Positions 628-64,000 of a stretch of 64,000 nucleotides of DNA are shown in pieces. Each line of letters starts with the position of its first letter. Positions within the stretch are counted from its first letter, which is position 1. The position numbers and the translations under genes are program-made. The stretch is from NCBI GenBank assembly GCA_002269645.1, contig NIVC01000428.1:124001-188000 (forward strand), written 5' to 3'. Source of the DNA: Macrostomum lignano (taxonomy: Eukaryota). The notes under the pieces were generated by a model. The model had not been told where the DNA came from. It saw only the letters and a list, made by a program, of their open reading frames with translations, and did not search any database.

Positions 628-20237
<19,610 letters not shown>

Positions 20238-37430: not shown

Positions 37431-38606
37431 AAACAGAATCTGACAGTATCCAAGGGAAATCCCTACCAGAATCTGACAGTATCCAAGGGAAATCCCCTAC
37501 CAGAATCTGACCGTATCCGAAGGAAATCCTCTGATAGTATCCAAGGGAAATCCCCTACCAGAATCTGACCGTATCCGAAGGAAATCCTCTGACAGTATCC
37601 GAGGGAAATCCCCTACCAGAATCTGACAGTATCCAAGGGAAATCCCCTACCAGAATCTGACAGTATCCAAGGGAAATCCCCTACCAGAATCTGACAGAAT
37701 CCCAGGGAAATCCCCTACCAGAATCTGACCGTATCCGAAGGAAATCCCCTACCAGAATCTGACAGAATCCCAGGGAAATCCCCTACCAGAATCTGACAGA
37801 ATCCCAGGGAAATCCCCTACCAGAATCTGACCGTATCCGAAGGAAATCCCCTACCAGAATCTGACAGAATCCCAGGGAAATCCCCTACCAGAATCTAACA
37901 GTATCCCAGGGAAATCCCCTACCAGAATCTGACAGTATCCAAGGGAAATCCCCTACCAGAATCTGACAGTATCCAAGGGAAATCCCCTACCAGAATCTGA
38001 CAGAATCCAAGGGAAATCCCCTACCAGAATCTGACAGTATCCAAGGGAAATCCCCTACCAGAATCTGACAGTATCCAAGGGAAATCCCCTACCAGAATCT
38101 GACAGAATCCCAGGGAAATCCCCTACCAGAATCTGACAGTATCCAAGGGAAATCCCCTACCAGAATCTGACAGTATCCGAGGGAAATCCCCTACCAAAAT
38201 ATGACAGTATCCAAGGGAAATCCCCTACCAGAATCTGACAGAATCCCAGGGAAATCCCCTACCAGAATCTGACAGTATCCAAGGGAAATCCCCTACCAGA
38301 ATCTGACTGTATCCAAGGGAAATCCCCTACCAGAATCTGACAGAATCCCAGGGAAATCCCCTACCAGAATCTGACAGAATCCCAGGGAAATCCCCTACCA
38401 GAATCTGACAGAATCCCAGGGAAATCCCCTACCAGAATCTGACAGTATCCAAGGGAAAATCCTACAAGAATCTGACAGAATCCCAGGGAAATCCCCTACC
38501 AGAATCTGACAGTATCCAAGGGAAAATCCTACAAGAATCTGACAGAATCCCAGGGAAATCCCCTACCAGAATCTGACAGTATCCAAGGGAAAATCCTACC
38601 AGAATC
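37431..38606 (+). repeat. 34-bp tandem satellite, about 34 copies (CAGAATCTGACAGTATCCAAGGGAAATCCCCTAC)
   Basis: Head-to-tail units with no spacers, between PEX3 and PRMT5. Confidence 0.95.
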
Positions 38607-39352
38607 ATCCCTCACTTAGCTAAAGGCGGGATTTTTTCCTACAGTTACATGGGTAAATAATTTCTATAGTACTCACAGAGAGATGCAGAGCCGGGCGAAC
38701 TTTAATAGTTGTTTTTAATTCTAGATGTTTTCCCTGTTTTCACCGCCCGTCATCATGATTTTTGGAACTAAACAAGAAAATATAAACTGCTCTAATTTTC
38801 TCCAGATTCTACTCAGTTTCAATTGTTAACTTTAGTAGTATGCTGTGGATTAAGCGTTTTCCCATTTGCCTGATTTTAGTTGATTGCGTTTCAACTTCTG
38901 CTAAATTGTTTTAAGTTGAATCGATAAAGTTGTATTGATTTGTTGTTTCCTGCTGCTCTTGTCTGTTGTTTTTGATCGCTAAAGATGATCAAAGCATTGT
39001 TTATCAAAAATCGAAAATCCAGTCACTTTTTTCGTATATGCGAATAATTGATATTGTGTATGACAATTCTGCGATGCTATTCATAATTCAATATCTTAGT
39101 TACGATTATTACGAGCGTATATTCAATTGGCTAAAATCGTGTTAGTCTTTGTTGCTTGTTGCATTTCACAGCAAACAGAATTTCGGTGCAAACTCTCGGA
39201 TAATCTCCTTCTAAACTGTTAGATAATCTCCTTATCAACTGAAGGATAATCATCTCCTTATAGACTGCGAAATAATCTCCTTCTAGATTGTTAGATAATC
39301 TCCTTCTAGACTGTAGGATAGTCTCCTTAACAACTATAGGGTGATTTCCTTT

Positions 39353-40186
39353 TCAATCTCCTTATCAAGTGTAGGATAATCTCCATATCAATCTCCTTAT
39401 CAAGTGTAGGATAATATTCATATCAATCTCCTTATCAAGTGTAGGATAATCTCCATATCAATCTCCTTATCAAGTGTAGGATAATCTCCATATCAATCTC
39501 CTTATCAAGTGTAGGATAATCTCCATATCAATCTCCTTATCAAGTGTAGGATAATTTCCATATCAATCTCCTTATCAAGTGTAGGATAATATTCATATCA
39601 ATCTCCTTATCAAGTGTAGGATAATCTCCATATCAATCTCCTTATCAAGTGTAGGATAATATTCATATCAATCTCCTTATCAAGTGTAGGATAATCTCCA
39701 TATCAATCTCCTTATCAAGTGTAGGATAATCTCCATATCAATCTCCTTATCAAGTTAGGATAATCTCCATATCAATCTCCTTATCAAGTGTAGGATAATC
39801 TCCATATCAATCTCCTTATCAAGTGTAGGATAATCTCCATATCAATCTCCTTATCAAGTGTAGGATAATATTCATATCAATCTCCTTATCAAGTGTAGGA
39901 TAATCTCCATATCAAACTCCTTATCAAGTGTAGGATAATCTCCATATCAATCTCCTTATCAAGTGTAGGATAATTTCCATATCAATCTCCTCATCAAGTG
40001 TAGGATAATTTCCATATCAATCTCCTTATCAAGTGTAGGATAATATCCATATCAATCTCCTTATCAAGTGTAGGATAATCTCCATATCAATCTCCTTATC
40101 AAGTGTAGGATAATCTCCGTATCAATCTCCTTATCAAGTGTAGGATAATCTCCGTATCAATCTCCTTATCAAGTGTAGGATAATCC
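39353..40186 (+). repeat. 35-bp tandem satellite, about 24 copies (ATCAATCTCCTTATCAAGTGTAGGATAATCTCCAT)
   Basis: Head-to-tail units ending about 180 bp upstream of the PRMT5 ATG. Confidence 0.95.
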
Positions 40187-40363: not shown

Positions 40364-42386
40364 ATGTCGTCATCGGAGAAACGGGACTGCAACGGTGCTG
40401 ACAAGGAGGAGCCGATAGGATCTGCTAGCGGCAGCGCCACCGCCGCCGCCGAAGCAGTCGCAGTGGAGCCTGCCAAAGAAGATTCTGCAGCCGATGCCGG
40501 GAAGAGCAGCGGCTACAGCGGAGGCAACAGAAGCAAACGAGGCAACTCCGGCCGCGCTCTGTGCGGCATCGACCTGGCGTTCTGCTCGGACCAGAAGGCC
40601 GGCATGCTGGAGGCGCACTCTTTAGGCTACGCGTTCGTCTGTCTGCCGCTCTTTCATCCGCGGAATGTCGTTCGGACCGGCGCCGATGTCGGTGGACACG
40701 CCGACCAAGAAGAGGAGGAAGGGCAGCGGCATCGTCAGCTCGACCAGCTGCGCCTGCTGCCGGCCACGCGGCCGGACCACCTGGTCATCGACTCGGAGGA
40801 CTGGACCCGCTTCGTTGTCGGCAAGATCTCGGCTTGGATTCGCTGCGACTCCAGCTGGGAGGCCGAGCGCCTGCAGTCCCTGGCCGCCCTGCGCCAGGAG
40901 CTCAGCTGGGCGGCGCACATCGGCCTGGTCGCCTGCCTCATCGACTTGCCCGACGGTGGCCGGGTGTCCAACCTGGCCAGGGCGCTGCTGGCCTTCCATC
41001 GGGCCGAGCGGAGCGCGCCGCTGATGTGGGTTCGCGTGCCGATGGCCGCTGAGCAAGTCGGAGACGACGGCGACATCGGCAACGGAGACGACGGCGACAT
41101 CGCTAGCAATGATCCGTGGCTGTGGTGGCACCGGCTGTGCAGGCTGTGCGACCTCATCCTCGGCCAGCTCGGCGTCGCCCTGGAGGTGACGGCCGACCTG
41201 CCTGGCCCGGCGGCTGTGCAGCGCTGGCTGGCCGAGCCAGTCAAAGCCCTGGTGCTGCCGACCTCGCTGTTCCTCACTAATCAGAGCGGCTACCCGGTGC
41301 TGTCCAAGGCGCACCAGGCTTTGCTGATGAAATTCTTCCGGTTGCAGCTGCAGGTAAGGGCCAGGGTACGTACCGGACTGACTTCCTGACAAATGAGTTC
41401 TTGTAATTGAAACTAGAAACCTATTGAATCCATATTGTAAAAGACTGTCCATGAAAAATTGCCACTTAAAACTATCCCTAGAGAATCGTCCCTTTGGATA
41501 GCAAATATTGTGCTTCGAAAATCGCCCTCCTTTCTTGTTGGGATTTCCTGGAAAATCGCCCTCGTATTATAATTTTCCTAGAAAATCGCCTTCTCATATA
41601 TGTTTTCCTGGAAAATCGCCTTCTTTTTCTCATTGTCCTTGGAAAATCGCCCTCTCTCATTAGAATTTGTCTAGAAAATGGCCCTCTTTTTCGTTAAGAT
41701 TTTCCTGGAAAATCGCCCTCTTTCTCATTAAGACTTTCCTAGAAAATCACCCTTTCTCATTAAGAATTTCCTGGAAAATCACCCTCTCTCATTAAGAATT
41801 TCCTGGAAAATGGCCCCTCCCCATCTCTAATCAAAATCGTCCCTGTGAAAATCGCCTTCTCGCTAATTCGACTTCAGGTGATCATCACTGGCAGCTGCCG
41901 TCATGAAAAAGGTATTGAGTACTATCAGCAGTACATCAACTGGCTGTACAGCCGCCGGTCCACGGATCTGTACACCAGCCAGGGCAAGGGTTACGAGGAC
42001 ACGCTGCAAGATCCGCTGCAGCCTTTGGCAGACAATTTGCACTCGGCAACTTATCAGGTGAGGCGTCTCTGTTGCTGCCGTCTCCTGTAGGATAGAAGCG
42101 CTGGTGATTTAAAAAACCCTTGCGATTTCTCAGCGATCTTGCAACTTTCAGCGCTTTGTTTAGCAGCCAGCATAACAGATGCGTAACTTGTCCCCCCTTT
42201 CTGTTCAGGTGTTCGAGATGGACCCGTACAAGTATCGCGCCTATCGCGAAGCGGTTCGTCAAGCTCTCGTCGAAATGGTGCCGGACTCCGAGGCCGAGAG
42301 CCGCCTGGTTACCATAGCTGTCCTTGGCGCCGGCCGGGGACCGCTGGTGCAGGTGAGGATGCGGCCCTGCGACTGGCGTGTCTGAC

Positions 42387-42419
<33 letters not shown>

Positions 42420-45062
42420 TAGTGTCTGTCTGTCTATCTGTCTGTCTGTCCGTCTGTCTCAGTGTCTGTTGATTTGTCTGTCCTGTGTCTGCCTATCTGC
42501 CCCGTCTGACTTTTTATCTGTATCTAAGTCTGTCTGTCTAAAAGTGATTCCAGCTTCCTCGCTACTGTCAGTAGGCTACCGAAGTCATGCAATCCCAATC
42601 ACCGCACAAAACCGCAGGAATGCCTAATCGCTGGCCGGCAAAGCGGTCGCCGAATTCGCGTATTCGCAGTTGAGAAGAACGGCAACGCTGTCAACACCCT
42701 GTTGAACCGGTCATTGTCCGAGTGGCCGGACAGTGTGGTTGTCCTGCCCACCGATATGCGCCAGCTTAAACCGACAGATTTGCAGGTGATTGAGTCTTCA
42801 CGCTTGTCTACTTTGTCTGTTGAGAAACGCGGCGATCCACAGCAAAACATTAACTTTCACCGTTCCCTATTCTCCGCTCCTTGTTGTAGCATTCCATTCT
42901 TTCCTGGCACTGGGATTTCCCTGTCACTGGGATTTCCCTGTTCCCTGTCACTGAGATTTCCCTGTTCCCTGTCACTGGGATTTCCCTGTTCCCTGTCACT
43001 GGGATTTCCCTGTTCCCTGTCACTGAGATTTCCCTGTTCCCTGTCACTGGGATTTCCCTGTTCCCTGTCACTTGGATTTCCCTGTTCCCTGTCACTTGGA
43101 TTTCCCTGTTCCCTGTCACTGAGATTTCCCTGTTCCCTGTCACTGGGATTTCCCTGTTCCCTGTCACTTGGATTTCCCTGTTCCCTTCACTGGAATTTCC
43201 CTGTTCCCTGTCACTGGGAGTTCCCTGTTCCTTTCACTGGAATTTCCCTGTTCCCTGTCACTGGGAGTTCCCTGTTCCCTTCACTGGAATTTCCCTGTTC
43301 CCTATCACTTGGATTTCCCTGTTCCCTGTCACTGGAATTTCCCTGTTCCCTGTCACTGGGAGTTCCCTGTTCCCTTCACTGGAATTTCCCTGTTCCCTAT
43401 CACTGGGATTTCCCTGGCAGCCCGGAGTCTCATGAGTGCATTGACAACCCCCTGCGCTTGCCTCACGGCCCAGGCGGACATTTTTGTATCGGAGCTGCTC
43501 GGCTCATTCGGCGACAACGAGCTCAGCCCGGAATGCCTGGACGGCGCTATGCACTGCCTGGCTGAAGGCGGCGTGTCCATTCCAATGTCCTACACTTCCT
43601 ACCTGGCTCCTATGCACAGTTCGACTGTGTACAAGTGCGTTGGTTTCAGTACAGTTTATTTTGTTGTTGTTAAACGGGGTTGGGAAGCCGGGAGCTACCC
43701 GTAGATCAGCCCTGGGAGGGGCTCTGCCGCTGAGGGTCACTACCAGGGGCATTAGCCCGAGATACCCCAAGATTGGACCCTGACGTCTGGCCTGGGCCAG
43801 GGGAATCTGCCAACCCAAGCCTTATGGACACCGCCAACCCAAAAGTGGAATCAGGGACGGTGCTAAGACCGAGTCCACCCAGCGGACAAATCCCGGGAGT
43901 GCGCGAAAAAAGAATTGGAAAATCTTGGAATACTACTGAAAGCGGTCGGAGAGCGGGGGGACCCCGAAGTCTACGGAAATGGCTTAATTTTGGAGTGAGT
44001 CTGGAAGGCTGAGTAGCCACTGACTGTTTTATGGAGACCGACTTTTTTCTCGCCTGAATTAGCCGACAATGCATTGTTTTTGTTGCTAGGAGGCGCGCGG
44101 TTATGCTGATTCCGTTGACCTCTGAGCACGCGCTCAAATTGTAGCTCGCATACATTGCCCTGAATTTTCATTTTCAGCCTTAGTAAGCTACTATGAGTAG
44201 GTATAAAAGAATGTGAAGTAAATCCTCGAACTTTTTTGTCTGCACAGGTGACTTCTTAGCTCAGCGGTTTAGGATCAGCTGGTGAAAATTAGAATCCAGA
44301 AAGCAGATCCTGGGGTTCCCGGAGGCAGAGAAGCTGGGCGGTAACGCGTCTTAAGCTACCTCAATATCGTAGGAGGGCTTCGGGCACCATGGCGCAATGA
44401 ATTCGGCGACATCGTCCGCAACTGAGGCAATTCCAGCCATTCCTAGAAATTATGTACGTTTTGCTGGAAAATCTAGATTAAGGATCAAGTTATCAGATTT
44501 GCTACTACGAGTACTAACTAAGTAGTAAATTTTCACATTTCTCTGCAACAAGCCACGTTTTTCGCGACTTTGCAGAGAGGTGACCCGCCAACGCGACCCG
44601 GAGAAGCCCTATTACACCTTCTTGGAGACGCCCTACGTTGTCAATCTGGTCAACAGCGAACTGCTGGCGCCGCCGCAGCCAGTCTTCACCTTCCGTCATC
44701 CGGCCGAATCAGCCGGACCGGACGGCCGGCCGGCCAGCAACGAGCGCTACATCGAGCTGACCTACCGGGCCGAGCGAACCGGGGTGCTGCACGGCTTCGC
44801 CGGCTACTTTGACAGTCGCCTATACGGCAGCGTCTCCATGAGCATCCTGCCGGAGGACCACAGCCCGGACCTGTTCTCCTGGTTCCCGCTGGTGTTTCCT
44901 CTGCACTATCCGGTGCCAGTGAAGTGCGGCGACGCCATCACCGTGGCCATGTGGCGCGTGGTCTCCGCCACGGCCGTCTGGTACGAATGGGCCCTGCTAG
45001 CGCCTGTGGTGCTGCCCATTCACAATGCCGGAGGTCGAAGCTTCACCATCAATTTATACTGA
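40364..45062 (+). CDS. PRMT5: Protein arginine N-methyltransferase 5 (~709 aa)
   Basis: Exons 40364-41353, 41878-42057, 42209-42352, 42618-42785, 43474-43634, 44576-45062. Motifs [91 protein letters not shown]. Confidence 0.97.
41510..41860 (+). repeat. Degenerate GGAAAATCGCCCTC-based repeat in PRMT5 intron 1
   Basis: Recurring GGAAAATCGCC motif about every 35-40 bp. Confidence 0.8.
42385..42540 (+). repeat. (CTGT)n microsatellite in PRMT5 intron 3
   Basis: Visible. Confidence 0.85.
42905..43412 (+). repeat. 24-bp minisatellite (TTCCCTGTTCCCTGTCACTGGGAT)n in PRMT5 intron 4
   Basis: Period 24, about 21 copies. Confidence 0.92.
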
Positions 45063-56516: not shown

Positions 56517-59248
56517 TCACAGGGCCGGCGGCAGCAACGGCTTGAAGTAGTTGGTGATCAGCTGAGCCGACGGCGAGGCCGCCGCCGGATCTCCGACGCC
56601 GCGAACACGGTCGGGCGTGCCGCCACTGAACAGCTTCGATTGTCGCGAGACTCGCCGCCGCTTAGCAGACTGCGGCTGCTGCTGGTTGACGAGCTGCAGC
56701 GGCCGGAGCGGCGAGTGCGCGGCAGTCGGCGACGGCGACTTCATAGCCGGGCGCTTCGACAGCCGGCGATTCGGCGTGTTGGTCGAATCGCGCAGCATTG
56801 ACAGCGGCGGCGGAGGAGTGGATGGAGGCGTCAGCGCCGGCTGCTGCAGCAGGGTCAGCTGTCGGCGCTGCGGGCTTTGATGCGGATTCGGGCGCGAGAA
56901 AGCGGCCGAAGGCGCCGCCAGGGTGGCCGACAGGAATTTGCGGATGTTCATCTGACGCTGCTGGCCAGTTGACGACGCCGAAAGCTTCGTCTGAAACGTC
57001 GGCGTCGACGATGACGACACGGCGGTGGGCCACCGGCAGCTCCAACAGCCGTCGCCGCTGCCGCTATCAGCCAAGGAGGCCAGGGCGCGCAGCCGGACTC
57101 GTTCAGCCTCGGCCGCTGGGCCCTCCATCTCCCAGTGCCGGCGGCGGCGGAGGCGCCACAGTCGCACGGTGCAATCGTCGGACAGCGTGGCCAACCGGAG
57201 CGGATCGCAGTTGCCCGGACACCAGACGGCCACGGGCACTTCGGCGTCGAAGCCGGACAGCAGAGCCGGCGGCTGGCCCGCCTGCTGCCAGTCGGTGGCG
57301 TACAGGGCCACCCGACAGTCGTTGCTACCGGCGGCCAGGAAGCGGCCGTCGGGGCTGACGCTGACTCGCGAGTAGAAGGCGTCAACCCGGTGCTGGCCGC
57401 GGTACACTGCGCTGGGCTCGGGCCGCAGCATCAGCGGCCGGAACTCGTAGACCGCGGAGTCCAGACAGCTGGCGAACAGGCGGCCCCTGTCGAAGGCCAG
57501 GTGAGAGTAGCCGTGCGGCTTGCCCGGCCCCGGGTAGGCCAGGATTTGCCGAGGCGTCAGCGGCTTCGGCGCCGACACGGACGAACGACGGCGTCGAGGC
57601 GTCAAGGCGCCCGATCCTGAGGCTGACAGGGCGCGGATGTCCCACAGTTGGATGACGCCGTCGGCCGCGCCGCAGGTGGCCAGACTGTTCGAGTCGATGA
57701 ACACCGCGCAGGTGACGCTGCTGGCGCCGCCACCTCCGCCACTGCTGGCCCCGACGGTCGCATGACTTCGCCGACGCCTGGCAGCGGTGGATGATGAAGC
57801 CGCACGTCGAGACGCGGCGCTGCTGCCGCTGCCGATAACAGGGCCACCGGCGTGGGCGTCAGGAATGACGCCGACGGAGCCGCCAGGAGTTCGCGAGTCC
57901 CACAGCCGTACTGTGCCGTCGCGCGAGCTGCTGCAGAACTGGCCGCCACTGGCCGGCTCGCCTGGCCGACAGCTGAGGCTCTTCACCGAGCTCGTGTGGC
58001 CATTGAAGGCGCGAATCTCGCGACGGTCCAGGCACGAGTGCAAGCGCACCTGAGGTTAGAGGCAGAATTAAAAGTTTTTTAGTATTCATTTCGCAATGGA
58101 AATGCTAAATTCCAAGAAATGCCAAGAACCTACAAACAGGTAGGTTGTTACCCCCTCCCTGAGCCTTCAGTAGGCTGCTACCCCCTCCCTGAGCCTTCAG
58201 TAGGCTGCTACCCCTTCCCTGAGCCTTCAGTAGGCTGCTACCCCCTCCCTGAGCCTTCAGTAGGCTGCTACCCCCTCCCTGATCCTTAAGTAGGCTGCTA
58301 CCCCCTCCCTGAGCCTTCAGTAGGCTGTTACCTAACCCCTGAGCCTTCAGTAGGCTGTTACCTAACCCCTGAGCCTTCAGTAGGCTGTTACCTAACCCCT
58401 GAGCCTTCAGTAGGCTGTTACCCCCTCCCTGAGCCTTCAGTAGGCTGCTACCCCCTCCCTGATCCTTCAGTAGGCTGCTACCTCCTCCCTGATCCTTCAG
58501 TAGGCTGCTACCTCCTCCCTGATCCTTCAGTAGGCTGCTACCCCCTCCCTGATCCTTCAGTAGGCTGCTACCTCCTCCCTGATCCTTCAGTAGGCTGCTA
58601 CCCCCTCCCTGATCCTTCAGTAGGCTGCTACCCCCTCCCTGATCCTTCAGTAGGCTGCTACCCCCTCCCTGATCCTTCAGTAGGCTGCTACCTCCTCCCT
58701 GATCCTTCAGTAGGCTGCTACCCCCTCCCTGATCCTTCAGTAGGCTGCTACCCCCGATGCAGCAGACCCTGCCCTAGCAGACCAAGCAGCAGCAGACCCC
58801 ATCCCCTGATACTTCAATCACTCACAGTTTTATCCCCAGACGCAGTCAACAGCTGGTCGGCACTATCTGCCATCCATTGCACATCAAAAATGGCATTCCG
58901 ATGCGCCCGCCAGGCCGTCAACAGGCCGGAGCCGGCTGGCAGCTCCGTGTCCATCAGCAGGACGCCGCCTTCCTCGTCGCCAACAGGTAGCAGGCTGGGC
59001 CGGTCGGGCCGCTTGCAGAAATCGGCCTGCATCGGCGGCACCCGCGGACTGACGTCGCCGGCCACCTCGAGAGTGTCGGACCAGGCCAGCTCCAGGTGGG
59101 ACAGGAATTCGGTTGGGAACGGCCGCGCGCTCAGGCTGTCCGACATTGACAAGGCCGAAGGCAGCGGGCCAAGTGGCCGACGGAGCAGCGAAGCGAAAAC
59201 TCTGGGGCACTGCAGCTTGGCATCAGCCAGGCTGTGTTTGTTGTGCAT
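56517..59248 (-). CDS. DTL: Denticleless/CDT2, WD40 substrate receptor of CRL4 (~651 aa)
   Basis: Exons 59248-58826 and 58049-56517. DEEGGVLLMDT...WRAHRNAIFDVQW...LLTASGDKT, GHTSSVKSL...SRDGTVRLWDSR, GYSHL...LFASCLD, FYSRVSVSPDGRFLAAGSND, WCP...LATLSDDCTVRLWRL, then a Ser/Pro/basic tail ending QLITNYF. Confidence 0.92.
58141..58755 (+). repeat. 30-bp minisatellite (TAGGCTGCTACCCCCTCCCTGAGCCTTCAG)n in the DTL intron
   Basis: About 20 near-identical copies. Confidence 0.93.
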
Positions 59249-59992
59249 GTCTGTCTGCCCACAGACTGGGGAGGGGGCTGGCTGGAGGGGTGTGAGATGT
59301 GGTTATCAATTAGTGTCTTGAGGTTGTGTTTAAAACACATGTTCCAGGTTAACATGCTATCAAAGACTACACTGTCGTGTCATGTGTTTTAAGAACTTCT
59401 TACTAACTGTGCATGGATTGCACAGTGTTATGCATTTTTGCTGCAGTAGCTAACATACCATACATGTCTTTTGTCTAGTAACCTCATAACTTGTAATATC
59501 ATAACTAAGCAATAATAAGACATACTAGAATCAAATAGTTAATATGCTATTTTACTAGATAGAAGTCAAAGACATCTAATACTAGGCTTAGTTATGCAGA
59601 AATTATGCCCTTTCAATATCCTAGACTTTGAAAATCCTGGGATTCTTAGGATTGAGATATCCCAGACTTTGCCAATCCTGTAATCCTGACAAATTGGGCT
59701 AGGATCCCAGGATCCTGGGATTAAAAAAGGCTAATCTGTTGGTGCAATTTTGGTTTACAAAGCTATCTTCTTTGAAAACAAAGAAAAATATTATGCCAAC
59801 AAAAAACTGACAATGAGCTTTTGAATTAGAGTGTGACATATAGGCAGGCATAATAAATATACTTTTTTATATGCCAATATCAACTTAGGAAAATCACACT
59901 TGATTATAATGTAACCTGGGGAATAATTGATTACAAAGCTATGGCCCAAGATACTAATACTAGGGTAAAAAGGATCAGACCTTATCCTCCTA

Positions 59993-60348
59993 TTTATTAG
60001 AGGCAGGGGGGTTGTGTGCAGCCTGGCGCACTTTAAGCGACATAGGCACACAACCGGCGAGAGGCATTACTGCCCATTCCGCCGACTCCCCTGAGCAGGC
60101 ACACAAGCGCGCGGATATGTACGCAGGCACACTCACACAGGAGTGTACAGCGGCCCTAACTTTATTTTATCGTTAGGCATGTACACTTCACTGCACCTTG
60201 GGGGGTTGGCTCTCAAGGCTGTTAATTGCACGAGCAGAGCCAAGCCGAGATTCCAATTCAGCCCCAAATTAATGTGACTGCACTTGGAATCAAGCCTGGG
60301 TCGCTGGCACACCAGAGCCTGCACTAGACCGCTGGGCTACGCCCCCCC
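59993..60348 (-). mobile_element. tRNA-derived SINE, copy A (~356 bp)
   Basis: Minus-strand head GGGGGGCGTAGCCCAGCGG (A-box-like) ... GGCTTGATTCC (B-box-like); AATAAA tail; 11-bp TSD TTATCCTCCTA at 59982-59992 and 60349-60359. Confidence 0.85.
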
Positions 60349-60885
60349 TTATCCTCCTACTCCTAGGAGCATTTGCCCTAGATAGAGAATTGGTAGCTTA
60401 GATTTTGGTCTAATAGCAAGGTTCCATTGTTCTTAGCCTTGGCTAAGGAGTTTTAAAAGTAGGGAGTCAGGGACTACTTAAGGTATTTTACTATCCTAAT
60501 GCTTTTTACTGGGGTAAGCCACTAGCTAGATATCTAAAAGGTCTCTTAACAGTGCTAAGAATAAGGTCTTTCCTATATGGGGGCTTTTGATCTGTGCAAG
60601 GTTAAGAGTTAAGACCCCTTGATTTTAGCTAGGTTTGAGGTAGAGGGAAAGTTCAAATAAACAATTATTTGACTCCTGTCTGGCAAGTTCTAGTGCTATA
60701 ATAAAAAACAATAAGGAATTGGCTTTTATTGCTTTAGGCTCTATGCATAGGTTTTAGAATATAGTTTACTAATATTATGTATACACTTACATAGGCCCTC
60801 TCTATATATTTATTATACCTAAAATCTAACAATTTTCTAATAGGCCTAGCTTCAGTCTTGTATCCTTACAATCTTAGCCTTCTCA

Positions 60886-61240
60886 GGGGGGCCGTAGCCC
60901 AGCAATAGCGCAGCTGCTCTGATGTGCCAGTGACCCAGGCTCAATTCCAAGTGCAGTCACATTAATTTGGGGCTGAATTGGAATCTTGGCTTGGCTTTGC
61001 TTGTGCAGCTAATAGCTTCAAGAGCCAACCCTCCAAGGCGCAATGAAGTGTATATGCCTAACAATAATATAAAGTTAGGGCTGCTGTACACTCCTGTATG
61101 TGTGCCTACGTACATATCCGCGCGCTTATATGCCTGCTCAGGGAAGTTGGTAGTATGGGCAATAATGCCTCTTGCTAGTTATGTGCCTGTCACTTAAAGT
61201 ATGCCAAGGTGCATATAACCCCCTTGCCTCTAATAAAAAA
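60886..61240 (+). mobile_element. tRNA-derived SINE, copy B (same family, inverted relative to A)
   Basis: Aligns end-to-end to the reverse complement of copy A; A-tail; 15-bp TSD ATCTTAGCCTTCTCA (60871) / ATCCTAGTCTTCTCA (61241). Confidence 0.85.
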
Positions 61241-64000
61241 ATCCTAGTCTTCTCACTAGCCTTAGCCAGTTAGCCTACATGCTTCAAAAGATTAATAAAT
61301 CAAAGCAAGACAGCTGGGTTATGATTTTAATTTGATAAGTACTTGAAGAAGCTCAGTTACAAATAATATTACTTAGGAATAAATGATTGAATTATTGCAA
61401 ATTATCATTAGGATCCCATCCTAATAATAGTCATTCTTAGGATTTTCTAATACTAGATAAGTTTGATTCTAAACCTTAGGATTTAGGCATAATCCAGGGA
61501 TTAGGCCTATGGGATCTTAGGATCCCAAGATTGTATTCCTTAATTAGGCAAATTAGACCAACATTTCAAAATATAGTAATTGTAGTATAGAAGTCATAAA
61601 GGCTAGAGCCAATCTAAAGCCTAGGCTAAGGCAACTTATAGGCCTAAGCCTATATATGCCCACAATAGCAGTTAGCTAGGCTAGGCCTAGTTTTTAGTAG
61701 TTTTATTAAACTATAATTAGATTAATACTATTAGACTAGGCCCCTATTAAACTTCTTTAAGTTTAGGCCTAAGGCAATAAAGTCTAGGGCTAGGGCCTAA
61801 GCCTTACTCTTTAATTTAGTGGCATAATATAGAAAGGATGGAAAGGCCAGTTGCCCCCCTTTATGTGAAGACTAGAAAAAAATCAAAAGGAGGACCAAGC
61901 AAATGTTTGCCAAAATACAGAGCTATATCCTGCATCCCCTCCACCCTCTTTTGGGTCTTAAGCCTCCAGAATAATGAATATACCCCCCTCAACAAATTTC
62001 TGGTTGCACTAGCTAAGTGCCCTAATTTATTATAAGTTTATTTTTAATCTTATTTGATAGTCATTTTGTCTGCAGCAAGTTCAGTTGCAACTCTTGCTGC
62101 CGCTGGCAGACAAAAAAGTAGGCCTAGCACTCAAACTAACTATTTAGACTTAGGCCTATGCACAGTAATGCACCTAAATCTCATTAGGCCTATCTCACCC
62201 AACAAAAAATACAAATATTTTCAAGAGTTTTTGTAGTTGACTATTCTTGCTCTGGTGTGGTGGCTAGGTTAGTTAGAACCTAAGCTAAGTAGGCACAGTA
62301 GGCCAGCCTAGATTATAGGGCATCCAAGCATGTTAACTTAGGGCCTACTTAATGATTATAGTCTTAGGATATGTGCATGAGCATAGCGTGCAAAATTTTT
62401 GTTGTTGTATGATTATCATTCAATTTAGATTTTAAAATCACTGTAAGAAAATACAGACCCAAGGACTCTATGTATCTGAATTAATAAGAAAACTTAAAGT
62501 GAGAATGAGCTTTAAATACTTGTTTATATCAGACAGACCTTAAATATTTTTCGCAGAAAACAGTAATAAAAATTAACAATTCGTTCATTCATTCGTTCGT
62601 GCATATGGCATATTATAGGCTACAGCATGCATATATGATGTATGTAGCCTATACATCCACCTATTTATTAAGTCTATATATATATAGACTATCGTTCGTG
62701 CATATGGCATATTATACACTAACTACTGAATTCACCAGCTGTTGGGTTCACCGGATTTTTAACTTTATTTTTAAGGCTTAAAAATATATATAATCGATAG
62801 CGCAAGTAAAACTAGAGATGCGCCTAGACTTTTGTATGATTTTATGATTAGTATAATCATATACCAAAGATAATGGCATTTTAAAATAAGGATGCACTAG
62901 CCATGATTGTATGAATATCTCTGCATAGGCCTAGGCCTAGAAGTTGCTTTTCTTTCTTTCTTATAATGTAAGTGCCTATATGAGCTATAAACTATAGTTC
63001 AGAATCAGAAAGCAACATATATTAGGATTTCCTAGCATATAACAAGGGTACTTGCCATTTTTTCAGCAGCTTAGCATATATCCCAATATATATGATAATG
63101 AAAACATGTGTGCTAGGGGTATTTCCTGTACGATACAAAATCCTACCACTGTAACCAAAGTTGTTACAGGTTTATAATTTCTTCTATTAAATTTCTGCTG
63201 CTGACACCAAATCTTGCCTTAATATTTCTAACTGTTTCTTAGAACTTCATTCAAATATTCCTGGGTAGTGTTCTGGTAGCGTTCTAGTAGCTTATAGCCT
63301 GAGTGGTCTAGTGCTGGTATATGTATTTTCTCTCTCCAGTCTGGGCGTTACTGAGATTAGAGGGTCACAGCGATTACTCTTAGTACTACTCTTTGCATGA
63401 ATCCTAAGTGCAACCTTCAACCTTCTTCACAATACTTTTAGAAATGAACAATGATCTGAGAAAGATTTATTGAACACGTTTTGAGCTTATATGTTATAGC
63501 TAGTAAACGAGTTATCTCTTCTTCCTCTCAGCCTGCTCCTATTTATACTATTTGAACGTGTGTATTTTTAACAAATATCAAATATTGAGAATATATAGAA
63601 TATATAGAATATTTTGTAGAGTAAAACAAATTATTAGTGCAGATTCAAACTGTTATATTCCTAGAAACTATTAACCACTTCTACAACTTTCTTCCTCTAA
63701 CATAAATTTTAAACAAAAGCATTGCTACAGTGAAAAATTTATAAATAGTCATAGTAGTACATATAGCTTAGAAGCCATCATATTAAGAACAGGAAAGCAT
63801 AGAAAATGTAAAAGACAACAATTATATCAAGTAGGTGCTTTGGTGCTATAGAACAACTAAAAATGTAGTGCATAAGGTGAGCATGAAAGTAAATTGGTTT
63901 TAAAGCACACGGTAGAAATTTGGTTTAAAATGCTCATAACACAAAACAAAAGAAAATACACTTGGCATAGAATGTTCAAAGTCAATTACCAAGTTTAAAA

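What the first reader, a model, noticed from the sequence alone, without database searches (positions are those of the whole stretch)
59982..61255. Paired SINE copies and a mutated TSD give direct evidence for non-CpG C>T hypermutation
Seen: hand alignment of the two ~355-bp SINE copies gives roughly 45 substitutions, of which only about 3 are transversions. Besides CpG decay there are many non-CpG changes (TACA>TATA, TTGTG>TTATA, CACAC>CATAT, CTGC>CTAC, CAGT>CAAT), mostly toward A/T in copy B. Copy B's 15-bp TSD, identical at insertion, now differs at two positions, both C/T in non-CpG context. Inference: a strong directional deamination process acting on TE-containing chromatin and spreading into flanks. 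This is the cleanest local evidence for a RIP-like system in an animal-type genome. The inverted arrangement ~540 bp apart could also promote pairing or dsRNA.
Basis: partly seen in the sequence, partly recalled or inferred. Interest (0 to 1): 0.85.

Follow-up and report, generated by a model that had tools for sequence, protein, structure and literature searches.

The report
Old and young flatworm SINE copies
Two head-to-head copies of a short retroposon in the flatworm Macrostomum lignano differ almost only by C-to-T changes because one copy has decayed heavily, about half of it at CpG sites, while its neighbour is nearly untouched; this fits age plus methylation-type decay better than a fungal-style repeat-induced mutation system.

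Summary
The window is Macrostomum lignano contig NIVC01000428.1. Two ~355-bp SINE-like retroposons lie head to head, 537 bp apart, each with its own target-site duplication (TSD): 13/13 bp for A, 13/15 bp for B. They differ at 46 positions: 41 transitions and 5 transversions.

I found a third insertion of the family elsewhere in the genome and used it as an outgroup. Copy B carries 41 derived changes: 34 C>T/G>A, 2 T>C and 5 transversions. Copy A carries 5.

C>T changes per available site in B are CpG 38%, CpA 18%, CpT 12% and CpC 4%. T>C is 1.3%. Eight of the 18 non-CpG changes hit ACA, mostly in CACACA runs.

Local controls look ordinary, with transition/transversion ratios of about 1.4-1.9. 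These are 13.5 kb of duplicated loci and 16 minisatellite arrays. The outgroup copies keep 24-25 CpGs.

The repeat-induced point mutation (RIP)-like reading is not supported. The partner copy is spared, tandem repeats are unaffected and there is no strand bias.

Best explanation: B is an older insertion in a CpG-depleted, AT-rich domain. It decayed by 5mC-type CpG deamination plus AT-biased transitions. The ACA hotspot is suggestive but rests on this one copy. The TSD mismatches carry no statistical weight. Interest is low to moderate.

The parts
59980..59992 (.). Target-site duplication of copy A, tail side (CCTTATCCTCCTA)
   Evidence: Exact 13-bp repeat of 60347-60359.
59993..60346 (-). SINE-like copy A: young, GC 56%, 17 CpG
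   Evidence: 85% identical to B. Only about 5 derived changes against the outgroup: 4 CpG C>T and 1 T>C.
60347..60359 (.). Target-site duplication of copy A, head side
   Evidence: Exact 13-bp repeat of 59980-59992.
60360..60870 (.). Pre-existing AT-rich spacer between the two heads
   Evidence: GC 35%. Observed/expected dinucleotide ratios: CpG 0.0, TpA 1.26, CpA 0.69, GpC 1.41. No repeat or ORF of note.
60871..60885 (.). Target-site duplication of copy B, head side (ATCTTAGCCTTCTCA)
   Evidence: Matches 61241-61255 at 13 of 15 positions; both mismatches are C/T.
60886..61240 (+). SINE-like copy B: decayed, GC 47%, 7 CpG, 30 TpA
   Evidence: 41 derived changes: 34 C>T/G>A, 2 T>C, 5 transversions. 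ACA hotspot at 8 of 19 sites.
61241..61255 (.). Target-site duplication of copy B, tail side (ATCCTAGTCTTCTCA)
60248..60290 (-). 43-bp core in copy A, shared across the family
   Evidence: Identical in A and B, with one mismatch in outgroup copy C1.
60944..60986 (+). The same 43-bp core in copy B
56517..59248 (-). Neighbouring DTL/CDT2-like WD40 gene (context only). It has two exons. Its intron holds a 30-bp x 20 minisatellite.
   Evidence: Pfam WD40 and beta-propeller hits. ORFs and splice sites read. The nearest relatives of the exon-2 ORF are proteins of about 450-800 aa at 28-47% identity. The DTL/CDT2 name rests on my reading of the N-terminal WD40 sequence, not on a database annotation.

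Best explanation
A and B are two independent insertions of one M. lignano SINE-like family, made at different times by LINE-type target-primed retrotransposition. They landed by chance 537 bp apart, head to head, upstream of a DTL-like gene. The surrounding non-coding domain is AT-rich and strongly CpG-depleted.

Copy B is the older insertion. Since it arrived it has lost about 15% of its G+C through C>T transitions on both strands.

The largest share of those changes is at CpG. This is as expected from deamination of 5-methylcytosine, because this flatworm retains DNMT1 and DNMT3.

The rest comes from AT-biased decay at non-CpG cytosines. That decay is concentrated at ACA in CACACA runs and spares cytosines preceded by G.

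Copy A is recent and shows only the first CpG losses.

Shown: independent insertions, direction of change, context-specific rates, asymmetry between the copies, ordinary spectra in controls.

Inferred: methylation as the cause at CpG, the relative ages, and whatever causes the ACA hotspot.
For: Organism and locus:
- An ORF in the window is 100% identical to M. lignano PAA83202.1 on NIVC01000428.1.

Independent insertions:
- Separate TSDs of different sequence and length, plus A-rich tails.

Polarised changes, using outgroup copies C1 and C2 from duplicated loci L002 and L003:
- B has 41 changes and A has 5.
- C>T per site in B: CpG 16/42, CpA 10/55, CpT 6/49, CpC 2/55.
- T>C in B is 2/149 and transversions are 5/350.
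- There is no strand bias: 17 C>T and 17 G>A on the sense strand.
- All four of A's C>T changes are at CpG.

Surrounding DNA:
- Flanks and spacer have CpG observed/expected 0-0.26, against about 1.0 in exons.
- GCH trinucleotides are enriched 1.6-2.2 fold in AT-rich DNA. This matches the sparing of G-preceded cytosines in B (2/62 against 16/97, p=0.01).

Age:
- B's TSD divergence of 2/15 fits B's non-CpG divergence of about 8% per lineage. A's TSD is perfect.

Literature:
- DNMT1 and DNMT3 are retained and 5mC levels are low in M. lignano (PMC11292947, PMC9246332, PMC10658182, all citing Wasik 2015).
Against: - B's CpG to non-CpG C>T rate ratio is only about 4. That is low for pure 5mC decay.
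- From B's ratio, A should show about 4 non-CpG C>T changes and shows none. This is weak evidence (Fisher p=0.11).
- B's non-CpG spectrum of 18 C>T, 2 T>C and 5 transversions is richer in C>T than the minisatellite control (p=0.0055).
- The ACA hotspot is significant after correction for 12 contexts (p about 0.001). Simple ageing under the background spectrum does not explain either of these last two points.
- No methylation data for this locus were available.
- Everything rests on one decayed copy.
Confidence: 0.55

Rival explanations
1. Transposable-element (TE)-directed cytosine mutagenesis in chromatin. M. lignano would have a process that deaminates cytosines in silenced TE copies. Either a DNA deaminase does this, or DNMT3-type non-CpG methylation at (N)ACA followed by deamination does. 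It would prefer CpG and ACA, avoid cytosines preceded by G, and not depend on pairing with a second copy.
For: - ACA is hit at 8 of 19 sites against 2 of 36 for other NCA sites. The corrected p is about 0.001.
- C>T is 72% of B's non-CpG changes, against 38% in minisatellite variants (binomial p=0.0005).
- Cytosines preceded by G are spared in B, and GCH is enriched in AT-rich DNA across the window.
- Both strands are hit.
- From memory, not tested here: mammalian DNMT3 non-CpG methylation favours CpA.
Against: - It rests on one copy only.
- Six of the eight ACA hits lie in four CACACA/TGTGTG runs, so they are not independent.
- ACA itself is not depleted in the AT-rich DNA (observed/expected 0.93).
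- The correlation between B's trinucleotide rates and depletion in the AT-rich DNA is weak (Spearman -0.36, p=0.17).
- Copy A and both outgroup copies show no non-CpG C>T excess.
- The literature searched describes no convincing AID/APOBEC-like gene in flatworms (PMC5889660).
Confidence: 0.2
2. Copy B was 'born old'. It was retrotransposed from a different subfamily master or from an already decayed genomic copy. Most of its C>T differences would then predate insertion and say nothing about this locus.
For: - Only three insertions could be compared, so private changes cannot be told apart from changes that define a subfamily.
- The family has subfamilies. The branch to copy C has 11 transitions, 14 transversions and indels.
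- A's lack of non-CpG changes in the same domain fits this reading.
Against: - 34 of 41 changes are GC>AT transitions, and 16 of them destroy CpGs. That is the pattern of decay in a silent copy, not of an active master.
Confidence: 0.15
3. Deaminase editing of single-stranded DNA during retrotransposition, in the manner of APOBEC. This would also hit the exposed target-site overhangs and so produce the TSD mismatches.
For: - Both TSD mismatches are C/T.
- Cytosines preceded by G are avoided, as with APOBEC1 and APOBEC3 enzymes (the enzyme preferences are from memory).
Against: - There is no strand asymmetry: 17 C>T against 17 G>A on the sense strand, and 8 against 10 at non-CpG sites.
- The highest rate is at CpG, which points to methylation.
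- Two mismatches are what age alone predicts.
Confidence: 0.05
4. A RIP-like, homology-triggered process recognised the A/B pair, or the dsRNA hairpin it could form, and mutated it.
For: - The changes are transition-only in character, and CpA>TpA changes and a rise in TpA occur in B (17 to 30 TpA).
- The pair would form a hairpin of about 350 bp if co-transcribed.
- The spacer shows low CpA and high TpA.
Against: - RIP mutates both partners. Here the counts are 5 against 41 (p=4e-8).
- CpG is hit more than CpA, the reverse of Neurospora RIP.
- Sixteen tandem arrays in the window have a transition/transversion ratio of 1.4 and no CpA preference.
- Duplicated loci L002 and L003, at 97-99% identity over more than 13 kb, diverge with a ratio of 1.9.
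- The outgroup copies keep their CpGs.
- The two literature searches that bore on this turned up no report of RIP in animals.
Confidence: 0.04

Closest known systems
CpG decay of methylated SINE copies, as in Alu and B1 ageing in mammals
   Same: - A short retroposon rich in GC and CpG loses CpGs fastest. TpG, CpA and eventually TpA are the products.
- Older copies sit at lower GC.
- The TSD diverges along with the element.
   Different: - The host is a flatworm with low global 5mC, and I found no published description of where its methylation lies.
- The CpG to non-CpG rate ratio is only about 4.
- There is an extra ACA hotspot.
Repeat-induced point mutation (RIP) of Pezizomycotina fungi
   Same: - C>T/G>A transitions dominate.
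- CpA>TpA changes occur.
- The DNA around the element is AT-rich and contrasts with GC-rich genes.
   Different: - Only one member of the pair is mutated.
- CpG is hit more than CpA.
- Tandem and segmental repeats are not affected.
- The organism is an animal.
AID/APOBEC editing of retroelements in vertebrates
   Same: - Many C>T changes sit in one retroelement copy.
- The rate depends on the 5' neighbour of the cytosine.
   Different: - There is no strand bias.
- The preferred 5' base is A, not T or C.
- CpG is the top context.
tRNA-related SINEs of flatworms, such as Schistosoma Sm-alpha
   Same: - Size of about 350 bp.
- Dispersed copies with TSDs.
   Different: No hammerhead ribozyme or tRNA model match was found by Rfam, even at E<=1. 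Sequence relatedness could not be tested because no repeat library was available.

Membership tests
SINE (non-autonomous retroposon mobilised by a LINE) | Short, non-coding and dispersed in several copies | tested here: met
   About 355 bp, with stops in every frame within 90 aa. Three independent insertions in about 103 kb of M. lignano DNA.
SINE (non-autonomous retroposon mobilised by a LINE) | Variable-length target-site duplications and an A-rich 3' tail | tested here: met
   TSDs of 13 bp (perfect) and 15 bp (13/15). Tails are TAATAAAT and TAATAAAAAAA.
SINE (non-autonomous retroposon mobilised by a LINE) | tRNA-, 7SL- or 5S-derived head with an internal pol III promoter | tested here: inconclusive
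   Motifs resembling box A (TAGCCCAGCGGTC) and box B (GGCTTGATTCC) can be seen by eye in the first 70 nt. ARAGORN and the Rfam tRNA model do not match.
SINE (non-autonomous retroposon mobilised by a LINE) | 3' end shared with a partner LINE | not testable with these tools
   No LINE is in the window and no repeat library was available.
RIP (repeat-induced point mutation) | Both copies of a duplicated sequence are mutated | tested here: not met
   A has 5 derived changes and B has 41 (binomial p=4e-8).
RIP (repeat-induced point mutation) | CpA is the dominant target, with TpA/ApT high and (CpA+TpG)/(ApC+GpT) low | tested here: not met
   In B the CpG rate is 38% and the CpA rate 18%. Around the pair TpA/ApT is 1.1-1.4, but (CpA+TpG)/(ApC+GpT) is 1.1-1.4, which is not low.
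RIP (repeat-induced point mutation) | Acts on any repeat above a length and identity threshold, including tandem and segmental ones | tested here: not met
   Minisatellite variants: 97 transitions to 71 transversions, with CpA 17, CpT 26 and CpC 19. Duplicated loci L002/L003: 42 transitions to 22 transversions.
RIP (repeat-induced point mutation) | RID/DIM-2-type cytosine methyltransferase machinery acting before meiosis | not testable with these tools
   No access to the M. lignano proteome beyond a few proteins.
5mC-deamination decay of methylated repeats | CpG cytosines mutate fastest, to TpG/CpA | tested here: met
   16/42 at CpG against 18/159 at non-CpG cytosines in B. All four of A's C>T changes are at CpG.
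5mC-deamination decay of methylated repeats | The surrounding domain is CpG-depleted while unmethylated DNA is not | tested here: met
   Flanks have CpG observed/expected 0-0.26 and exons 0.97-1.15. Loci L002 and L003 have 0.85, and copies C1/C2 there keep 24-25 CpGs.
5mC-deamination decay of methylated repeats | The host has maintenance and de novo DNMTs, and the locus is methylated | not testable with these tools
   The literature reports DNMT1 and DNMT3 present and 5mC low (PMC11292947, PMC9246332). Methylation at this locus is unknown.
AID/APOBEC editing of retroelement cDNA | Strand-asymmetric G>A on the sense strand in a fixed 5' dinucleotide context | tested here: not met
   17 C>T against 17 G>A on the sense strand. 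The preferred 5' base is A (10/32). T is 2/17, C is 4/48 and G is 2/62.

The most novel reading that the evidence does not exclude
Macrostomum lignano has a TE-directed cytosine mutagenesis that acts copy by copy in CpG-depleted, AT-rich domains. It hits CpG and ACA, spares cytosines preceded by G, and works on both strands. The cause would be either deamination after DNMT3-type non-CpG methylation or an unrecognised DNA deaminase. This would be a functional analogue of RIP in an animal, but without the need for pairing between copies. It could also help explain the genome's extreme mosaic of 60-70% GC genes and about 33% GC repeat-rich DNA.
Probability: 0.15. Interest if true: 0.7.

Novelty: new member of a known kind. 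Interest (0 to 1): 0.3.

Why it matters
If the ordinary reading holds, this is a textbook young/old SINE pair. Its main value is as sequence-level evidence that non-coding repeat domains of M. lignano are, or were, CpG-methylated while its GC-rich genes are not. That pattern is unusual for an invertebrate. [quoted passage not shown]

If the ACA/CpG hotspot pattern recurs genome-wide, it would point to a TE-directed mutational defence in an animal. That would matter for how genome defence evolved outside fungi.

Tried and rejected
Getting more copies of the family, which mostly failed:
- blastn and an nhmmer profile found no further copy in the window or in loci L002 and L003.
- A search with the SINE translated as a peptide gave one M. 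lignano protein. That protein led to the only extra insertion, copies C1 and C2.
- Eight candidate exact proteins were not in the collection.
- The only M. lignano DTL entry is UniRef-only and has no contig.
- A metagenome scan for the 24-bp core gave nothing.
- Locus L001 was simply part of the window itself.

Readings rejected:
- A fungal origin with true RIP was my first thought, given the GC mosaic and the CpA>TpA changes. It was rejected by vitellogenin, VWD and PRMT5 genes and a 100% match to M. lignano.
- Gene conversion as the reason for the unchanged 43-bp core was rejected. The core is conserved in the outgroup too, and only about 1.5-3 changes were expected there (my own estimate).
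- Rfam and ARAGORN gave no tRNA or hammerhead match.
- The TSD mismatches carry no statistical weight as evidence of flank mutagenesis. Two mismatches in 15 bp fit either model.
Full report
**What is there**

The region holds two copies of one element of about 355 bp in inverted, head-to-head orientation.
- Copy A lies at 59993-60346 on the minus strand.
- Copy B lies at 60886-61240 on the plus strand.
- They are 85% identical.
- A has a perfect 13-bp TSD, CCTTATCCTCCTA, at 59980-59992 and 60347-60359.
- B has a 15-bp TSD, ATCTTAGCCTTCTCA / ATCCTAGTCTTCTCA, at 60871-60885 and 61241-61255. It has two C/T mismatches.
- The chance of a 13/15 match in one register is 9e-7.

These are two independent insertions, not an inverted duplication. 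The evidence is the different TSDs of variable length, the A-rich tails, the lack of coding capacity and the GC-rich head with motifs resembling box A and box B. Together these make the element a SINE-like retroposon. ARAGORN and the Rfam tRNA model do not recognise the head.

**Whose genome**

My first suspicion was a fungus with true RIP. The window is a mosaic of 60-70% GC blocks and 28-38% GC blocks, and many of the changes are CpA>TpA.

That was wrong.
- The GC-rich ORFs encode vitellogenin/VWD, PRMT5, a WD40 DTL-like protein and Pex3.
- PRMT5's nearest relatives are animal proteins at 40-45% identity.
- The 1344-aa ORF at 10956-14990 is 100% identical to Macrostomum lignano PAA83202.1 on contig NIVC01000428.1 of assembly GCA_002269645.1.
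- Locus L001, fetched from that contig, is identical to window 956-30237.

The literature says this free-living flatworm retains DNMT1 and DNMT3 and has low 5mC (PMC11292947, PMC9246332, PMC10658182). More than half of its genome is repeats, and 15% is simple or tandem repeats (PMC5730564).

**Polarising the differences**

The window has no third copy. A search with the SINE translated as a peptide found an M. lignano HSBP1 protein with a SINE-derived extension. A member of its cluster led to two duplicated loci, L002 and L003. Each carries the same third insertion:
- C1 at L002:10826-11152.
- C2 at L003:9368-9694.

With C as outgroup:
- The B lineage has 41 changes: 34 C>T/G>A, 2 T>C and 5 transversions.
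- The A lineage has 5: four CpG C>T and one T>C.
- The asymmetry gives p=4e-8.
- The branch leading to C has 11 transitions, 14 transversions and no direction. Ordinary subfamily divergence in this family therefore looks quite different from what happened to B.
- Four sites at the 3' end could not be polarised because C has a deletion there. I took A's state as ancestral at those sites.

**Context of B's changes**

C>T changes per available cytosine:

| Context | Changed / available | Rate |
|---|---|---|
| CpG | 16/42 | 38% |
| CpA | 10/55 | 18% |
| CpT | 6/49 | 12% |
| CpC | 2/55 | 4% |

- T>C is 2/149 (1.3%) and transversions are 5/350 (1.4%).
- The two strands are hit equally, with 17 C>T and 17 G>A on the sense strand.
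- Among non-CpG sites the hits concentrate at ACA: 8/19, against 2/36 for other NCA sites. The permutation p, corrected for 12 contexts, is about 0.001.
- Six of those eight hits lie in CACACA/TGTGTG runs, so they are not fully independent.
- Cytosines preceded by G are spared: GCH 2/62 against 16/97 (p=0.01).

**Controls from the same genome**

- *Duplicated loci.* L002 and L003 are 97-99% identical over 13.5 kb. Their isolated mismatches are 42 transitions to 22 transversions, with 9 at CpG and no dependence on local GC.
- *Minisatellites.* Variants in 16 arrays of the window were polarised by each array's consensus. They give 66 C>T (CpA 17, CpT 26, CpC 19, CpG 4), 31 T>C and 71 transversions.
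- *B against these controls*:

| Test | p |
|---|---|
| All transitions/transversions, against duplicated loci | 0.012 |
| Three categories at non-CpG sites, against minisatellites | 0.0055 |
| Non-CpG transitions/transversions, against the cleaned duplicated-locus control | 0.12 |
| C>T:T>C, against minisatellites | 0.055 |

- *Outgroup copies.* C1 and C2 are at least as old as the duplication of their loci. They still have 24-25 CpGs and differ from each other by about 2 transitions and 4 transversions.

The C>T excess in B is therefore real but only moderately supported. It is not a property of repeats in general in this genome.

**The surrounding DNA**

- Flanks and spacer are 34-35% GC, with CpG observed/expected 0-0.26, GpC 1.2-1.7 and TpA 1.0-1.26.
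- Exons have CpG about 1.0 and TpA 0.3-0.5.
- In all AT-rich non-tandem tiles of the window, GCC, GCA and GCT are enriched 1.6-2.2 fold and NCG is depleted to 0.4-0.6. This is the same sparing of G-preceded cytosines seen in B.
- The rank correlation with B's rates is not significant (Spearman -0.36, p=0.17).
- ACA is not depleted in the AT-rich DNA (0.93).

**Interpretation**

The pair was not hit as a pair. A RIP-like process triggered by homology or dsRNA should mutate both partners, prefer CpA, and also affect tandem and segmental repeats. All three expectations fail.

APOBEC-type editing of cDNA should be strand-biased, and B is not.

The simplest account is that B is older than A and sits in a domain where cytosines, above all CpG cytosines, are lost. 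This is most likely through 5mC deamination.
- B's TSD divergence of 2/15 pairwise matches its non-CpG divergence of about 8% per lineage.
- A, with a perfect TSD, shows only four CpG losses.
- The two TSD mismatches carry no statistical weight. Any insertion of that age would show them, and two transitions out of two has probability about 0.3 under the background spectrum.

**What remains unexplained**

- The CpG to non-CpG rate ratio in B is low, at about 4.
- A has no non-CpG C>T changes (weak, p=0.11).
- B has the ACA hotspot.

Three accounts remain for these points. One is a context-specific, TE-directed deamination, for example after non-CpG methylation. Another is hypermutability of the CACACA runs themselves. 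The third is that B was copied from an already decayed source. I could not obtain more copies to decide between them.

If the A/B unit were co-transcribed it would fold into a hairpin of about 350 bp. Nothing here shows that it is transcribed.

**Verdict**

The directional C>T decay of B is confirmed and polarised. The claim of a RIP-like system is not supported. A non-CpG, context-specific component is suggestive and cheap to test genome-wide.

Noticed in passing
window 1-64000: The window is an extreme compositional mosaic. Coding ORFs are 60-70% GC, with CpG observed/expected about 1.0 and TpA 0.3-0.5. Non-coding DNA is 28-38% GC, with CpG observed/expected 0-0.26 and GpC 1.2-1.7. This suggests CpG loss, and so probably methylation, confined to non-genic repeat-rich DNA. 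That is unusual for an invertebrate.
   Followed up: partly
window 3037-5087, 17267-18447, 37434-38606, 39322-40185, 58140-58755 and about 12 more: The window holds at least 16 minisatellite arrays, with units of 12-43 bp and lengths up to 2 kb. Several lie inside introns. One example is the 30-bp x 20 array in the intron of the DTL-like gene. Their variant spectrum is ordinary, with a transition/transversion ratio of about 1.4.
   Followed up: yes
window 823-20237 (- strand): The GenBank gene model PAA83202.1 (1741 aa) stops at 10956. A gap of about 55 bp there separates it from a further 1223-aa ORF at 7230-10901. A VWD-domain ORF lies at 823-2973. The annotated vitellogenin-like gene is probably cut short by a retained short intron. 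UniProt holds a 2480-aa version (A0A1I8GT35).
   Followed up: partly
L002:10826-11152 and L003:9368-9694: A third insertion of the SINE family lies next to an HSBP1 gene in two 97-99% identical duplicated loci. A UniProt HSBP1 model (A0A1I8GC36, 118 aa) reads into it, so part of that predicted protein is SINE-derived. This subfamily has an extra 14-16-bp insert, and its 3' end lacks about 13-17 bp of the A/B sequence.
   Followed up: partly
window 60248-60290 (-) and 60944-60986 (+): The 43-bp block ATTCCAAGTGCAGTCACATTAATTTGGGGCTGAATTGGAATCT is identical in A and B and has one mismatch in C1. It may be a conserved SINE core domain. It could not be compared with known SINE cores because no repeat library was available.
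   Followed up: no
window 40364-45000 (+): A PRMT5 gene is plainly present, with a 341-aa first exon matching the TIM-barrel domain at E=3e-56. No M. lignano PRMT5 protein appeared in the protein collection, so the gene seems to be unannotated in the public records.
   Followed up: no
window 59700-59721, 61409-61422, 61510-61531: Short GGATCC-centred palindromic motifs (TAGGATCCCAGGATCCTGGGAT and relatives) recur on both sides of the SINE pair. They may be remnants of an older decayed repeat.
   Followed up: no
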